Source: Macrostomum lignano
Lineage: Eukaryota
Assembly: GCA_002269645.1 (NCBI GenBank)
Contig: NIVC01000136.1
Location: forward strand, 62,001-126,000
DNA length: 64,000 nucleotides
Direction of reading: 5' to 3'
Numbering within the stretch: position 1 is the stretch's first letter; each line of letters opens with the position of its first letter. This document shows positions 26,251-38,200 of the stretch, piece by piece. The notes beneath the pieces were generated by a model that did no database searches, had not been told where the DNA came from, and worked only from the letters and a program-made list of their open reading frames with translations. Both the position numbers and the translations under genes were made by a program.

Positions 26251-29200
26251 TCAGCCCAGCACAGAGGCGGTGACGGCCACGCCCCGCTCAAAGAACTGCG
26301 TAGCCGTGTTTGGCTCCTCAGTGGGGAAGGTGAGGGTGAACAGCAGCTGAGCCCGGGTGGAGTTCAGGTACACAGGCAGACTGACTGAGCTCTCAGGCGG
26401 CGGCTTCTTGTAGGCCTCGTGCCTCACCCAGCAGATCTCGGTGCGGGCCAGCTCGCTGCTGATGCTGTTCACCAGGCGGAGCTTGTTGTCGGCGCACTCG
26501 GCTCCCATGAGACGCAAGCCGTGCACCACGAAGGTGCTGGCATCGGGCGGCGGGCCGTCAGCAGCTGGACGGACCTTCACGTCCAAAGTGAGCTCCTCCA
26601 GGGCCCAGCGGTTGCTCTGGGCAACGGTCTGCCTGGTGGCGGTGATGTAGGCCTCGGGCATGAAGAGGCCGCCAAGCCACACGGGAGCCAAGCGAAGCGA
26701 CTCAATGCCGCCCTTGGCAACCAGATCTGAGATTCGAGCCATCTGCCGGACCCGCTCGGCAAAGTCGGCAACCCACTGGATGGCGGTGAGCCCAGCTGGC
26801 ACCGTGTACTTCTTCCAGCCAGCCGGTATGAGGCTCTTCTGCAGGTCCGCCATCATCTTGCGGTGATGATTTGTCGGCTTGCGCTCCGCCGCGCACACTG
26901 CCGCCACCTCGCTGAGATCTTTGCGCACCGCGGCAAGCAGGTTGGCAGCTGAGGTGACCTCGCGCTCGAAGCAGCGGAACAGCGGATCCTTGATGTTCTC
27001 GGCTGTGCGGGCCATGCGGCGCAGGTCCTTGGGCAGCTGGCCCAGCCAGTCATTGGCCTGGTTGCACAGCTGCCGCATCCAGGCCGGCCTGGCGTCACCC
27101 GCATTGCTGATAGTGCGCTGGCGACCGCTGACCACCAGGTCTTCGTCATCTTCAACGTGCTGCATCTGCATCACCTTGCCCAGCATCTCTTGGCCTGAGT
27201 TAAAAGGGGGAAAAAGAACACAAAACTGACATGGACTTTTGGTTTACTATTTTTGTTAGTAAAGTTTAAATTGGCGCAAAAATTTTTTTACCAGTAATTC
27301 AAATTCGCGCCAAAAATTACGCTGTCTGGATTTTTGTTTTACATTATAAAAAGGTGATAGCTATTCAGAGAGGAAAAAACACAAATCTTGATTTATTGAG
27401 TTTTAAATTTAAAACAATTTTTGTTAAACTACTTTAGAAACTTTTTGGCACGAATTCAAATTTTTGAAAAACATTGTTAAAACCAGAGGAAAAACTGCCT
27501 TCCAGTGTGTACATAGTATGTACTATCGCATTGATTTTTGACGAAAGAACTTGTACCGCACCTCAGAAGGAATATACGGAGAAAAAACAGCATTACCTAC
27601 CCTGAAACTCCTTAAGAACTACAGTACATAGGATCGTATAAATATGGTAATGAGAGAAAAAACCGCTTCACCAGTCGAACTCCACCTTGAGTTTTAATAT
27701 ATACAGGTGTTTTCATATTATCCTAAAGAGACTGTGAATAAGACAGGAATGCGTGACTGTACCGCCTTCATCTTTCTCGTCCTCCTCCAGCAGGTCAAGT
27801 TTCAGCAAGTCTTTCACAAGTCGAGCCGCTGTACAGAACAAAATTCAATTAGTGTAAGTGCGCATCTTGACAAAACTTAATTAAAATACAAAAAAGGCGC
27901 ATATTAAACAATAAAATGTGGCTGTCTCAGCGTACTGCAGGGCACACTGGAGTCGGTGATACGCAGAGCAGCATAGAAAAAGTCAGCCCAGCTTCCTCAG
28001 CTTCGTCTGCCACAGTTAGGGAACGCCTCAGACAGCTACTTAAGAAGCTGACTGGGAGCTGTCCGTGGACAAAGTCAAAGAGCTGATGATAGTAAAGAAA
28101 GAGATTTAAAAAATTTAAATTTGATTTCCAATACATATCGGCAGAATGAATAAATTGGAAAATAACAGCCAACCTACTGATTCTAGCGTTGGTGCAACTC
28201 AAATTAAAAGGCCTTGTCTGACTGCGTACTAACCGCTATTAGGTTGGCTTAACCTGCTTACAAAAACGATATGATACTTTTTTTGATATGATAATTAATA
28301 CTTTAATTTCAAGGGCACTGACATTAAGAAATCAGAGTGCATGTGGCTGTCTCAGCGTACTGCAGGGCGCACTGGGGTCTGTGATACGCAGAGCAGCATA
28401 GAAAAAGTCAGCCCAGCATCCTCAGCTTCATCTGCCACAGTTAGGGAACGCCTCAGGCAGCCAATTTAACAATACAGACTGGCTGGGAGCTGTCTGTGGA
28501 CGACATGGAATCTCATTAAATAGACTGGCTATTCACACTACTGCAGCTCAGTAGTATCTGAGACTCTGTGAGCGATCTGAGCCCCAGCCCCACTAGCTAC
28601 TCACACTACTGCAGCTCAGTAGTATCTGAGACTCTGTGAGCGATCTGAGCCCCAGCCCCACTAGCTACTCACACTACTGCAGCTCAGTAGTATCTGAGAC
28701 TCTGTGAGCGATCTGAGCCCCAGCCCCACTAGCTACTCACACTACTGCAGCTCAGTAGTATCTGAGACTCTGTGAGCGATCTGAGCCCCAGCCCCACTAG
28801 CTACTCACACTACTGCAGCTCAGTAGTATCTGAGACTCTGTGAGCGATCTGAGCCCCAGCCCCACTAGCTACCCACACTACTGCAGCTCAGTAGTATCTG
28901 AGACTCTGTGAGCGATCTGAGCCCCAGCCCCACTAGCTACTCACACTACTGCAGCTCAGTAGTATCTGAGACTGTAAGCGATCTGAGCCCCAGCCCCACT
29001 AGCTACTCACACTACTGCAGCTCAGTAGTATCTGAGACTGTGAGCGATTTGAGCCCCAGCCCCACTAGCTACTCACACTACTGCAGCTCAGTAGTATCTG
29101 AGACTCTGTGAGCCCCGCAGCGGACAGCCGCAGACACGCAGGCCGCGAGTCTCTGAGGCAAAAATGCCGCACAGGGCCGCCAACCGTCTGCCACAGAAGG

Positions 29201-35200: not shown

Positions 35201-38200
35201 TAGCTGCTGTCTATGGGGATCTGGGATCTGGGAGAAGCTGCCCAGTCTATGGGGATCTGGGATCTGGGAGAAGCTGCTCAGTCTATGGGGATCTGGGAAA
35301 AGCTGCCCAGTCTATGGGGATCTGGGATCTGGGAGAAGCTGCTCAGTCTATGGGGATCTGGGAAAAGCTGCCCAGTCTATGGGGATCTGGGATCTGGGAG
35401 AAGCTGCTCAGTCTATGGGGATCTGGGAAAAGCTGCCCAGTCTATGGGGATCTGGGATCTGGGAGAAGCTGCTCAGTCTATGGAAATCTGGGATCTGGGA
35501 GAAGCTGCCCAGTCTATGGGGATCTGGGATCTGGGAGAAGCTGCCCAGTTTATGGGGATCTGGGATCTGGGAGAAGCTGTAGATCTGGGAATTGGGAAGA
35601 ATAAGAATGTAAGTTGCTGAGGAGAATCAATAACAAGGTGCTCACCTCAACCCTAGCCAGGTCGCTCCTGTACTTGATATTAGCCTGCTGCAGATGATGC
35701 GACCAAGTGGTGAACAGAGTAGTTCTCATGTGCTGATCAAAGTAGCCAGCATAGGCCATGAAAGCTGAGCTGAGCAGGCAGTCGCCAACAATAGTCTCCA
35801 TCTGAGCTTTGAAAGCATCTGAGCCACTCTCCCAGCGTTTCTTCTCGTTGCTAAGCGAGGACAGCAGCGCAACGGACCGGCTGACCTTGGCTTCAACCGA
35901 GGCCAGATCGGATTTGATAGCCTGAGCCTGGCTAATCAGAGCCGCGTATTCCTCTTTGTACTTGGCGATGCTTTTCTCCAGGCGGCTGATCTCGGCTTGG
36001 CATTCCTCAGCATTCCGCCTGTTGGATCCGGCCTCAACCTCCAGGGCTTTGAGCTCGGCACGGAGCGGCTCAACCTTCTGCAGCATCTCGGCGTAGCTGA
36101 TCTGGGCGATGGCCCACTTCACCATGGGGCCGCAGGCTATGCTGGCCCGGTTGACTTTCTCGAAGTTGTAGTCGGGATTGGACAGGTACTTCTTCTTCAT
36201 GGTCTCGCGGATGGAGTCGCTGCATTTCGTAATTAAATTTTGCAGTTTTTTTGTTAAAGCGATTTGTATTTGATAACTTGAGAAAATGTGAAAGCAAAAG
36301 CATGTTGATCCTTGATCACCAATATAAAGATGGAGGTAATTAATTAAGCGAACCAGCTTAATCATAAAGACAATGCCAGGTGTAGGAAAGATTTATATGC
36401 GATCGTACTACTGATTGGAATACTACTGATTGATATTGCGAATTTGGCGGCTGGCAAATATTTTTTCTCTACGAAATTATAAATAAATTTGTAGCCTACT
36501 CAACTTATACTACTTTTAGTAGCTTAGTACTGCTTGAGATGCAAAAATCCAGCTGAATACAATTACGAGATAACTGTCGAGAAGACCGATATCTTGAACG
36601 CAAATATACTACTTAACAAGTAAGTAGGTTTCAGATTTTTTTTATAAATCTTTCGAATCTTTACAGTGGTTTTTGAAATCGAAAAAATCGAAGTGCGTCA
36701 TTTATTGACTCATAATAAATAGGATAAGGAAACTCGGCCACCTGTTTAACTATATAGAGGAGTTCGCTCTCTGATTGAACTTACGGCATCTCCAGTGTCT
36801 TATAATTAACAATACTTGGCACAAAGGTGTCTTTAACAATTACACCTTGAATCTGCTTCCAATCTGAGGACTTCTCTCCCAACAGTAGGCAGATGGATTC
36901 CACGGCCATTTTCACCGCCGGCGGCGGGTTCTTCATCGCTTTGATCTCCTGAATATCCTTCCGCTTGATGCCCTCAACGGCTGGTTAGCGGCGGATTTAA
37001 GAAAAGTATGGGGAGGGAGGGGCGAATCGGATTAGCAAAGCAACGAATTGAGCCGCTGACTCACCTGAGATCTTCAGTCTGATAATTGAGCAGCTGAGAT
37101 ATGAAATTGTCTCGCATTAGAATGGTTCGGATGGACTTCCAGTCTTGAGTAGGCTCGCCTAGCATGGTGCACACGGACTCCAGGGCCAGCTTCACTAGCG
37201 GTGGCGGGTTTGGCAGGCTGCGGACTTCCACCAGCTGCTGACGGGTCACCGCGTTCACGGCTAGATAGCAGCGAAAGTAGTGCATAGCGGATGGGGAAGT
37301 TGCGGTAATGCCAGTGGTATGCATGGAGCTTGGCAGCGGTCGGTTCAGCCATCGAGTTTTATAATTATAAAATTAAATTAAGTGAGCCAGAATACCAAGA
37401 CTTCAGTAGTATGGTGAGTAAAATCCAACACCTGTTTCTAGCTGTACACTACAGATTCTAATTACATCCCACATCTCCAAACAGCACATACAAAATCCCA
37501 AACTGCACATCCCACATCCCAAACCGCATATCCCTAATCCCAAACGGCACATCCTACATCCCAAACTGCACATCCCACATCCCAAATCCCAAACCGCTCA
37601 TCCCAAATCCCAAACCACTCATCCCAAATCCCAAACCGCTCATCCCAAATCCCAAACCGCTCATCCCAAATCCCAAACCGCTCATCCTAAATCCCAAACC
37701 GCTCATCCCAAATCCCAAACCGCTCATCCCAAATCCCAAACCGCTCATCCCAAATCCCAAACCGCACATCCAAAATCCAAAACTGCACATCCCACATCCC
37801 AAACCCCAAACCACATATTCCAAATTCCAAACCACACATCCTAAATCCTAAACCGCACATTATAAATCCCAAACTGCACATCATAACCCTAAACCGCACA
37901 TCCCACTTCCCGAACTAGAGATTTCATAATCATAACTGATATGAAACAGTCGAATATTTGAGCAAGCAAAAACTAAAACAAAGCAACTCACCCTGCTTAG
38001 CCTCTGACACGGCTGGCTCCACCTGACTAAGCTCGGCCGTGACCTCCTTGGTCTTCTCAGCGATGAAGATCTCTTTCTCGGCCAGACTCTTCTGTAGCAT
38101 CTCGCCCTTCTTCTTGCTCTCCTCGGCCACCTGTTGATCCTGCACCATCTGCTTCAGCTTCTGGTTGGCCTGCTCGTTCATTCGCTCCAGTTCGCTGCGC

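What the first reader, a model, noticed from the sequence alone, without database searches (positions are those of the whole stretch)
27713..37260. Possible coordinated 'two motors from one gene' system (MTBD choice x C-terminal choice)
Both alternative modules duplicate parts of the motor that set microtubule affinity and autoinhibition or processivity. Inference only: exon B plus the short tail could form a distinct isoform, for example for sperm, cilia or neurons, replacing a gene duplication. Up to four combinations are possible.
Basis: inference. Interest (0 to 1): 0.7.

Follow-up and report, generated by a model that had tools for sequence, protein, structure and literature searches.

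The report
Alternative motor exons in dynein gene
A cytoplasmic dynein heavy-chain gene of an unidentified invertebrate, probably a flatworm, carries two conserved alternative exon modules: an either/or pair for the microtubule-binding tip, and a small optional exon that duplicates the helix tethering the C-terminal cap; nothing shows that the two choices are linked or that a short-tailed motor is made.

Summary
The gene on the minus strand (about 49.5 to 26.25 kb) is a cytoplasmic dynein-1 heavy chain.

**MTBD choice: real.**
- Exon A (37260-37065) and exon B (36980-36785) are both 196 nt, with the same splice phases and canonical sites. They are 39% identical in protein.
- Only A-alone or B-alone keeps the reading frame.
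- The same A-then-B pair occurs in three other groups of contigs.
- A- and B-type exons form separate clades with matching branching, and both are under purifying selection.
- Several related contigs carry only the B type.
- A mutually exclusive exon in Schistosoma dynein-1 was published in 2011.

**C-terminal choice: a real element, probably misread.**
- The 66-nt exon (27828-27763) has counterparts in the same intron of two other species (99 and 81 nt).
- All three start and end in codon phase 1, and all have lengths that are multiples of three.
- Homology ends exactly at a G|GT.
- The exon duplicates helix H1 and the acidic start of the hinge, at the junction between the AAA6 lid and the C-terminal domain.
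- This fits an in-frame cassette better than a truncating "short tail". The read-through tails are unconserved and look like translated intron.

**Coordination:** no evidence either way. No transcript data could be reached.

The parts
37992..38538 (-). Upstream constitutive exon (stalk strand CC1). The 3' end is exact (..GCT AAG CAG G|gtgagt, phase 1); the 5' end is only the limit of the open reading frame.
37065..37260 (-). Exon A, 196 nt, the canonical-type alternative. It encodes [65 protein letters not shown](S), which is the end of CC1 plus MTBD helices H1 to about H4 (human residues about 3295-3360).
36981..37064 (-). The 84-nt intron between A and B. Its best branch-point-like motif (tgctaat) lies about 30 nt from the 5' splice site, followed by a pyrimidine tract. 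This may sterically block A-to-B splicing (inference).
36785..36980 (-). Exon B, 196 nt, the alternative of the distinct B type. It encodes [65 protein letters not shown](P).
35646..36219 (-). Downstream constitutive exon (remaining MTBD helices, including H6, and stalk strand CC2). It starts cag|C GAC TCC and ends GTT GAG|gtgagc.
29422..29860 (-). Penultimate constitutive exon (AAA6 lid, Pfam AAA_lid_11). It ends ..AAC TTG G|gtaaga, phase 1.
27763..27828 (-). Mini exon, 66 nt, tgtacag|CG GCT..GGC G|gtacag, phase 1 to 1. It encodes (A)[21 protein letters not shown], a second copy of helix H1 plus an acidic stretch. The most likely reading is an optional in-frame cassette.
27713..27762 (-). An ATTAAA starts at 27698. 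It is not conserved in the other two species.
26251..27194 (-). Last coding exon, including the stop codon. It begins ctcag|GC CAA GAG ATG (the constitutive H1 helix, [19 protein letters not shown]..). The Pfam Dynein_C domain (the C-terminal cap) starts at its first residue.

Best explanation
One cytoplasmic dynein-1 heavy-chain gene carries two separate, evolutionarily conserved alternative-splicing modules in its motor.

Module 1: the exon pair.
- It is a classical mutually exclusive pair; each mRNA must hold exactly one of two 196-nt exons to stay in frame.
- The exon encodes the distal end of stalk strand CC1 and MTBD helices H1 to about H4. CC1 and H1 are the only parts that move when dynein switches between weak and strong microtubule binding.
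- Exon choice therefore swaps the affinity switch while keeping H6, CC2 and the rest of the motor.
- Type B differs from type A in the same ways in every species: a more basic H1 region (+3 against +1 or +2), V to Q at exon position 11, R to L/Q at position 45 (human R3339), and R to K at position 50 (human R3344).
- The inference is two motors with different microtubule affinity or release kinetics. The direction of the difference is unknown.

Module 2: the mini exon.
- It is a small optional exon in the last intron that most likely inserts, in frame, a second copy of helix H1 plus an acidic stretch, exactly between the AAA6 lid and the C-terminal domain.
- The inference is that this lengthens or re-seats the tether of the C-terminal cap and so modulates the cap's known restraint on force and processivity. 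It would not delete the cap.

Shown: the exon anatomy, frames, homology, orthologues and purifying selection.
Inferred: expression, mutual exclusivity at the RNA level, biophysical effects, and any linkage between the two choices.
For: Gene identity.
- The best solved-structure matches are cytoplasmic dynein-1, E about 1e-59 to 1e-61, against about 1e-18 to 1e-20 for dynein-2 and axonemal dyneins.
- Pfam finds AAA_lid_11 followed by Dynein_C.

Exon pair.
- Equal length, phases and splice sites; 39% identity, E = 3e-19.
- A+B together gives an immediate stop. Skipping both gives a stop after 7 codons.
- Orthologous A-then-B pairs, all 196 nt, occur in L001, L003 and L008-L010.
- The B clade has 98% bootstrap support and the A clade 74%, with the same internal branching.
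- Between orthologous exons, codon positions 1/2/3 differ at about 0.2-0.4 / 0.1-0.3 / 0.55-0.69, for both A and B.
- B is the only exon at this position in L004-L007 and L011-L012.
- The A/B diagnostic differences are consistent across species.
- H1 and CC1 are the moving switch (PMC6629372). K3336N and R3344Q, at positions inside this exon, weaken microtubule binding (PMC3824068).

Mini exon.
- Homologues lie in the same intron of L001 (99 nt) and L013 (81 nt). Both are phase 1 to 1 and both end at G|GT.
- It is the only intronic DNA that aligns between the window and L001.
- It aligns to human H1, GVDMISKMLKMQM.
- It sits exactly at the AAA_lid_11 / Dynein_C boundary.
- H1, the hinge and the cap are described in PMC4339881.
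Against: - No transcript evidence for exon B or the mini exon was found. The protein searches returned no spliced product from this lineage of any isoform, so this is uninformative rather than negative.
- The mini-exon donors are weak in all three species (GCG|gtacag, AAG|gtgccc, GAG|gtcaat).
- Cassette inclusion would give two H1-like helices in tandem, which no solved dynein structure has.
- An in-phase GT is not rare by chance. The first GT after the helix being in phase 1 in all three species has a chance probability of about 1/27.
- The mini exon is absent from three relatives: L011, L014 and Protopolystoma.
- The organism is not identified.
Confidence: 0.6

Rival explanations
1. Exon B and a truncating 'short tail' are used together to make a distinct second motor (for example for sperm, cilia or neurons), with the two choices coordinated on single transcripts.
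For: - Both modules exist and are conserved.
- The window and L001 carry both modules, and L011 carries neither the pair nor the mini exon.
- A protein ending after the mini exon would stop just after an H1-like helix. That is where the rat MD-deltaCT construct (residues 1157-4348) and yeast dynein end, and that truncation raises force and processivity (PMC4339881).
Against: - There is no single-molecule or expression data.
- The mini exon looks like an in-frame cassette (lengths 66, 99, 81 nt, a conserved G|GT, unconserved intron-like tails).
- B is the sole form in several relatives, so it is not intrinsically a specialist form.
- The species co-occurrence rests on three loci only.
Confidence: 0.06
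2. The mini exon is an alternative last exon. Splicing into it, followed by polyadenylation in the intron, gives a cap-less dynein, independently of the MTBD choice.
For: - Read-through reaches TGA after 16 codons, and an ATTAAA starts 15 nt after that stop.
- The donors are weak in all three species.
- The truncation point matches MD-deltaCT and yeast dynein.
Against: - Read-through tails of 16, 31 and 40 residues share no similarity and are hydrophobic, as expected of translated intron.
- No stop position is conserved.
- Homology ends at an in-phase G|GT in all three species, and exon lengths are multiples of three.
- The intron is AT-rich, so an ATTAAA is expected by chance.
Confidence: 0.15
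3. The mini exon is never part of a mature mRNA. It is a decaying partial duplicate of the start of the last exon, or a conserved intronic regulatory element.
For: - Within the window alone it is not significantly similar to the last exon.
- Its donors are weak.
- It is missing from three relatives.
- No transcript was found.
Against: - The reading frame stays open with the correct phase in three species whose introns otherwise do not align.
- The changes are of the protein-conserving kind (CGA/AAG for R/K, CTT/TTG for L/L; hydrophobic spacing kept), by direct reading.
- The exon end 'DEG G|gt' is the same in the window and L013.
Confidence: 0.15
4. Exon B is a dead duplicate (pseudo-exon), and the gene makes only the A form.
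For: No transcript evidence for B was obtainable.
Against: - B orthologues are 67-77% identical across species, while third codon positions are near saturation.
- B has intact splice sites and an exact length of 196 nt in four lineages.
- B is the only exon at this position in several relatives.
Confidence: 0.03

Closest known systems
Mutually exclusive exon in Schistosoma mansoni cytoplasmic dynein heavy chain (SmDHC1), Pillmann et al. 2011, PMC3228551; mentioned again in Kollmar 2016, PMC5100056
   Same: - Same gene family.
- One pair of equal-length, homologous exons with split codons at both ends.
- Judged mutually exclusive from sequence.
- The low-GC loci L008-L010 could be Schistosoma-like, but this is not shown.
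   Different: [quoted passage not shown] It gives no function or distribution, so identity with this exon is likely but unverified.
- New here: the location (CC1, H1 to about H4 of the MTBD), the A and B clades, the B-only lineages, and the selection evidence.
Arthropod muscle myosin heavy chain, clusters of mutually exclusive exons that tune the motor domain (cited in PMC3228551)
   Same: One motor gene yields several motors by swapping homologous exons that encode mechanically critical parts.
   Different: - A different motor superfamily.
- Many clusters and many alternatives, with direct expression and functional data.
- Here there is one pair plus one small exon, and no expression data.
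CT-cap control of dynein: the rat MD-deltaCT construct and S. cerevisiae dynein (Nicholas et al. 2015, PMC4339881)
   Same: The mini exon duplicates exactly the H1 helix and the start of the hinge, at the boundary where MD-deltaCT (residues 1157-4348) and yeast dynein end. Any isoform made here touches the element shown to limit force and processivity.
   Different: - Those are an engineered truncation and a lineage-wide loss of the cap.
- The anatomy here favours an insertion that keeps the cap.
- No natural alternatively spliced version is described in the papers I read.
Tandem duplicate of the same exon in a teleost dync1h1 (Coryphaenoides rupestris, locus L002)
   Same: The same exon with the same 196-nt length and phases, as two tandem copies with ag|..|gt.
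   Different: - Both fish copies are of the canonical type and group with mouse, so this was an independent duplication.
- The deposited protein model strings both copies together (P0010).

Membership tests
Cytoplasmic dynein-1 heavy chain | Closer to dynein-1 than to dynein-2 or axonemal heavy chains | tested here: met
   PDB search: dynein-1 chains at E about 1e-59 to 1e-61, against about 1e-18 to 1e-20 for dynein-2 and axonemal chains, for both isoforms.
Cytoplasmic dynein-1 heavy chain | C-terminal architecture: AAA6 lid followed by the Dynein_C domain | tested here: met
   Pfam AAA_lid_11 (E = 3e-31) then Dynein_C (E = 4e-49). The alignment to human residues 4272-4438 is collinear once the mini exon is left out.
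Mutually exclusive exon pair (criteria of Pillmann et al. 2011) | Neighbouring exons of about equal length with the same splice-site phases | tested here: met
   196 and 196 nt, ag|..|gt, phase 1 in and phase 2 out, 84 nt apart.
Mutually exclusive exon pair (criteria of Pillmann et al. 2011) | The exons are homologous and encode the same structural part | tested here: met
   39% identity, E = 3e-19. Both align without gaps to the same MTBD residues.
Mutually exclusive exon pair (criteria of Pillmann et al. 2011) | Including both exons or neither is not viable | tested here: met
   A+B gives a stop at the junction. Skipping both gives a stop after 7 codons.
Mutually exclusive exon pair (criteria of Pillmann et al. 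2011) | Both copies maintained by selection | tested here: met
   Orthologous pairs occur in three further lineages. The two clades have matching branching. Substitutions are biased to third codon positions for both A and B.
Mutually exclusive exon pair (criteria of Pillmann et al. 2011) | mRNAs contain exactly one of the two exons | not testable with these tools
   No transcripts of this species or its close relatives were retrievable.
In-frame cassette exon | Length a multiple of three, open frame, and usable acceptor and donor, conserved across species | tested here: met
   66, 99 and 81 nt, phase 1 to 1, with a pyrimidine tract plus AG and a G|GT donor in the window, L001 and L013. The donors are weak.
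In-frame cassette exon | Conserved above the intron background | tested here: met
   Scores of 50 and 45 against null maxima of 36 and 33, with 0 of 200 shuffles reaching the observed score. It is the only alignable intron segment.
In-frame cassette exon | Seen both included and skipped in mRNA | not testable with these tools
   No transcript data.
Truncating alternative last exon (cap-less dynein) | A conserved stop codon or C-terminus shortly after the exon | tested here: not met
   The read-through tails are 16, 31 and 40 residues long, unrelated and intron-like.
Truncating alternative last exon (cap-less dynein) | A polyadenylation signal downstream of the stop | tested here: inconclusive
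   An ATTAAA starts 15 nt after the TGA in the window, but the intron is AT-rich. The other species were not checked.
Coordinated distant splicing choices | The two choices are linked on single mRNA molecules | not testable with these tools
   This needs long-read cDNA spanning about 12 kb of gene.
Coordinated distant splicing choices | The two modules co-occur across species | tested here: inconclusive
   The window and L001 have both modules. L011 (B only) has no mini exon. L013 has the mini exon but its MTBD region is not on the contig. L014 lacks the mini exon and its MTBD region is unknown.

The most novel reading that the evidence does not exclude
The two modules together encode a second, mechanically distinct cytoplasmic dynein-1. 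Its B-type microtubule-binding switch would be paired on the same transcripts with a C-terminal cap that is loosened (extra H1) or removed (truncation). That would be a natural, regulated counterpart of the engineered high-force, highly processive cap-less motor, conserved across a flatworm-like lineage.
Probability: 0.07. Interest if true: 0.85.

Novelty: new variant of a known kind. Interest (0 to 1): 0.5.

Why it matters
Functional diversity in cytoplasmic dynein-1 is usually attributed to accessory chains, adaptors and regulators; none of the dynein papers read here describes heavy-chain motor isoforms.

- Evolution has kept two versions of the very element that gates microtubule binding (CC1 and H1).
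- It has also kept an optional second copy of the helix that tethers the C-terminal cap.
- The A and B sequences are ready-made natural variants for asking how H1 and CC1 sequence sets affinity, release rate and tension sensing.
- The H1 duplication offers a natural handle on cap function, whose regulation is still unclear.
- An independent duplication of the same exon in a teleost fish suggests that this exon is a recurrent site of motor tuning.
- If the lineage is parasitic flatworms, isoform-specific biology would also bear on their cell biology.

Tried and rejected
- **Same-species records.** Exact look-ups of two window products, the 311-residue last-exon ORF (26251-27186) and the Eaf7-like ORF, found nothing, so no same-species contigs or transcripts were reached.
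- **Transcript evidence.** Protein searches with an isoform-B junction peptide, a B-exon profile and a C-terminal profile returned no spliced product from this lineage. Expression of B and of the mini exon therefore stays untested.
- **Taxon.**
  - Rfam found nothing.
  - Sample accession numbers are in no paper.
  - Cluster members carry no useful names.
  - The only hints are that the best named C-terminal hit is the monogenean Protopolystoma, a shared 'RCFEREV' motif, and the published Schistosoma exon.
- **Metagenome scan** with the B-exon profile found one unrelated dynein only.
- **Docking/selector RNA pairing** around the exon pair: only two weak inverted repeats, both inside the intron after B. 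Not pursued.
- **Mini exon as part of the neighbouring SINE-like repeat:** rejected. The repeat ends about 90 nt away, and the mini-exon sequence itself is single-copy in the window.
- **Mini exon replacing the constitutive H1 through an internal acceptor in the last exon:** the phase-compatible AGs lie in the purine-rich acidic codons, have no pyrimidine tract, and are not at one conserved position. Unlikely but not excluded.
- **Insertion in the Protopolystoma protein model at this site:** it reads as a retained 102-nt in-frame intron, not a mini exon.
- **Scan for further duplicated coding segments in the gene:** the output was swamped by intronic minisatellites, so the scan is not informative.

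
Full report
**What the region is.**
- The minus strand from about 49.5 kb to 26.25 kb encodes a cytoplasmic dynein-1 heavy chain. One giant exon of 2364 codons (40249-47343) and about a dozen smaller exons lie in the window.
- Peptides across the finding match solved cytoplasmic dynein-1 structures at E about 1e-59 to 1e-61. Dynein-2 and axonemal dyneins match at about 1e-18 to 1e-20.
- The C-terminus carries Pfam AAA_lid_11 followed by Dynein_C.
- The finding's limits are exact. 37260 is the first base of exon A. 27713 is the last base of the stop codon reached by reading through a small exon in the last intron.

**The MTBD choice is real.**
- Exon A (37260-37065) and exon B (36980-36785) are each 196 nt. 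Each is preceded by ag and followed by gt, enters in codon phase 1 and leaves in phase 2. They are 84 nt apart.
- Their products are 39% identical (tblastn E = 3e-19). The window holds no third copy.
- Spliced between the constitutive exons (upstream exon ending at 37992, downstream exon starting at 36219), A alone or B alone gives an open frame.
- Either version aligns without a gap to human DYNC1H1 residues 3268-3423, at 208.6 and 202.1 bits.
- Because 196 is not a multiple of three, A+B gives a stop at the junction and skipping both gives a stop after 7 codons.
- These are the defining features of a mutually exclusive exon pair.

**Both exons are kept by selection.**
- A search with the isoform-B peptide, then with a B-exon profile, found B-type exons in unnamed public contigs.
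- Fetching those contigs showed the same A-then-B tandem pair, always 196 + 196 nt with canonical sites, in three places:
  - L001 (ENA metagenome assembly ERZ25070786)
  - L003 (SRR3136933)
  - L008-L010 (ERR5919563, ERR3012897, ERR3012908)
- In a neighbour-joining tree of the 66-residue segment, B-type exons form a clade with 98% bootstrap support and A-type exons one with 74%. The order (window,(L001,(L003,L008))) is the same inside each. The duplication therefore predates the split of these species.
- Between orthologous exons, third codon positions differ at 0.55-0.69 (near saturation). Positions 1 and 2 differ at about 0.2-0.4 and 0.1-0.3, for A and B alike.
- B is, if anything, better conserved than A (window against L001, L003, L008: 70, 67, 70% for B; 65, 53, 62% for A).
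- Several related contigs (L004-L007, L011-L012) have a single exon at this position, of the B type, with no room for an A copy. So B can be the only form. Whether those genomes hold a second dynein-1 gene is unknown.

**What the exon pair encodes.**
- By the alignment to human DYNC1H1, exon position p corresponds to human residue 3294+p. The exon covers the last turns of stalk strand CC1, the conserved NPP, and MTBD helices H1 to about H4. H6 and CC2 lie in the constitutive downstream exon. The helix assignment is from my own knowledge of the MTBD structure.
[quoted passage not shown] It also states that H1 clashes with beta-tubulin in the weak state and stabilises binding in the strong state (PMC6629372).
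- Two human disease substitutions on the MTBD surface that weaken microtubule binding, K3336N and R3344Q, fall inside this exon at positions 42 and 50 (PMC3824068).
- A and B differ consistently across species:
  - the H1 region (positions 5-17) has net charge +1 or +2 in A and in mouse, and +3 in every B
  - position 11 is V in A and Q in B
  - position 45 (human R3339) is R in A and L or Q in B
  - position 50 (human R3344) is R in A and K in B
- I infer that the two exons give motors with different microtubule affinity or different coupling of stalk registry to binding. Which is stronger cannot be told from sequence.
- Exclusivity is enforced at least by the reading frame. In the window and L001 the A-B intron is very short (84 and 69 nt), and its best branch-point-like motif (tgctaat, tactaac) lies only about 30 nt from the 5' splice site. 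A steric block on A-to-B splicing is therefore possible (inference).
- No convincing competing RNA pairing was found.

**The C-terminal choice.**
- In the 2.2-kb last intron (29421-27195) lies a 66-nt open segment, 27828-27763: tgtacag|CG GCT ... GGC G|gtacag.
- The penultimate exon ends in phase 1 (29422) and the last exon starts in phase 1 (27194). The segment can therefore be skipped, which gives a sequence collinear with human. It can also be included in frame, adding [22 protein letters not shown].
- Within the window it is not significantly similar to the start of the last exon. Taken alone, it could have been chance.
- It is not chance, for these reasons:
  - L001 has, in the same intron and phase, (A)TKLLSDVLKMDVLEATAAADEKTELQQADPQQ (99 nt).
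  - L013 (DRR639838) has (A)MQVMRNLMKVQAIEENAKDDAKSDEG (81 nt).
  - The matches score 50 and 45 against null maxima of 36 and 33, with 0 of 200 shuffles reaching the observed score.
  - It is the only part of the intron that aligns between the window and L001.
- HMMER aligns either the mini exon or the start of the last exon to the same human helix, GVDMISKMLKMQM, starting at human residue 4336.
- Pfam places the mini exon exactly between AAA_lid_11 and Dynein_C.
- This helix is H1. According to Nicholas et al. 2015, the 32-kDa C-terminal cap hangs from H1 by a disordered hinge of about 20 residues. Deleting the cap after H1 (rat residues 1157-4348) raises force and processivity to yeast-like values (PMC4339881).

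**Cassette or short tail?**
- In all three species the exon length is a multiple of three (66, 99, 81 nt).
- The first GT after the helix-coding part is in phase 1 as G|GT.
- The window and L013 share the exon end GAT GAA GGN G|gt.
- Similarity stops at that GT.
- The read-through continuations (16, 31 and 40 codons) are unrelated and look like translated intron.
- I read this as a conserved splice donor, and so as an in-frame optional exon that adds a second H1-like helix plus acidic stretch ahead of the constitutive H1. I do not read it as a truncating last exon.
- Caveats:
  - the three donors are weak (no G at +5)
  - the phase agreement alone has a chance probability of about 1/27
  - an ATTAAA starts 15 nt after the window's read-through stop
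- A truncated, cap-less isoform therefore remains a minority possibility, which I put at about 0.15.
- A swap through an internal acceptor in the last exon is unlikely.
- The mini exon is absent from L011, L014 and the Protopolystoma model.
- My mechanistic inference for the cassette is as follows. If the new helix takes the H1 groove, the old H1 and hinge become a longer tether, which loosens the cap. If it does not, it simply lengthens the linker. Either way it would modulate the cap rather than remove it.

**Coordination.**
- Nothing in the sequence bears on whether the A/B choice and the mini-exon choice are linked on single transcripts.
- The species distribution is compatible with co-occurrence but far too thin to count as evidence. 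The window and L001 have both modules, and L011 has neither the pair nor the mini exon.
- No transcripts of this lineage could be reached.

**Organism and prior knowledge.**
- The species is not identified.
- The best named hit to the C-terminal profile is a fragment from the monogenean flatworm Protopolystoma xenopodis. It shares the unusual motif RCFEREV with the window, L001, L013 and, as RCFDREV, L011.
- Pillmann et al. 2011 used the Schistosoma mansoni cytoplasmic dynein heavy chain as their example of a mutually exclusive exon with equal lengths and split codons at both ends (PMC3228551). Kollmar 2016 notes alternative splice forms in dynein motor domains (PMC5100056).
- The low-GC loci L008-L010 (GC 0.32-0.34) may be Schistosoma-like. 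This is a guess.
- The existence of such an exon pair in dynein-1 is therefore already recorded.
- In the papers I could search, I did not find:
  - its location in the affinity switch
  - the A and B clades and the B-only lineages
  - the H1-duplicating mini exon

**Verdict.**
- The 'coordinated two motors from one gene' reading is unproven.
- One of its two legs, the short tail, is probably wrong in form.
- Novelty: a new variant of a known kind.
- Interest: moderate (0.5).

Noticed in passing
L002 1037-1232 and 1416-1611 (Coryphaenoides rupestris, GCA_002895965.2 PIJE02022797.1): A teleost dync1h1 has two tandem 196-nt copies of the same MTBD exon, both with ag|..|gt and both of the canonical type. 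This looks like an independent candidate for a mutually exclusive pair in a vertebrate. The deposited protein model (P0010) strings both copies together.
   Followed up: partly
L004-L007, L011-L012: Related contigs carry only the B-type exon at this position. Either exon A was lost, or those genomes split A and B between two genes. It was not possible to tell which.
   Followed up: partly
window 27915-28090, 28327-28520, 25301-25492, 31084-31215 and at least 9 further sites: A short interspersed repeat family has 13 or more copies in the window, several of them inside dynein introns. One copy ends about 90 nt upstream of the mini exon but does not include it.
   Followed up: partly
window 28524-29113, 29974-30273, 32184-32596, 33596-34517, 35133-35579, 37464-37905, 39322-39508: Nearly every dynein intron holds a minisatellite array (periods 20-138 nt, up to 20 copies). 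This gives long spurious ORFs on both strands.
   Followed up: no
window 40249-47343 (minus strand): A single exon of 2364 codons covers the tail, the linker and AAA1-AAA4. L001 has similar giant exons, whereas L008 and L011 are split by many introns, including one after 'WAIAQ' that the window lacks. This points to intron loss in the window's lineage.
   Followed up: no
window 48079-48693 (plus strand): An ORF with the end of an RNase H domain (Pfam E = 2e-6) sits inside a dynein intron on the opposite strand. It is probably a retroelement fragment.
   Followed up: no
window 23822-24442 (minus), 7403-7774 (minus), 61647-62324 (minus): The neighbouring genes are an Eaf7/MRGBP-like protein just downstream of dynein, a fibrinogen C-terminal domain ORF, and a PDZ-domain ORF.
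   Followed up: no
P0135 (Protopolystoma xenopodis protein model): The annotated protein has a 34-residue insertion at exactly the AAA6-lid / H1 junction. It reads as a retained in-frame 102-nt intron (it begins G|GT.. and ends ..tttag|G), so it is probably an annotation error and not a mini exon.
   Followed up: partly
window 36224-36253 and 36542-36571: A 30-nt inverted repeat (73% complementary) lies within the intron between exon B and the downstream exon. One arm abuts the downstream acceptor. Its significance is unknown.
   Followed up: no
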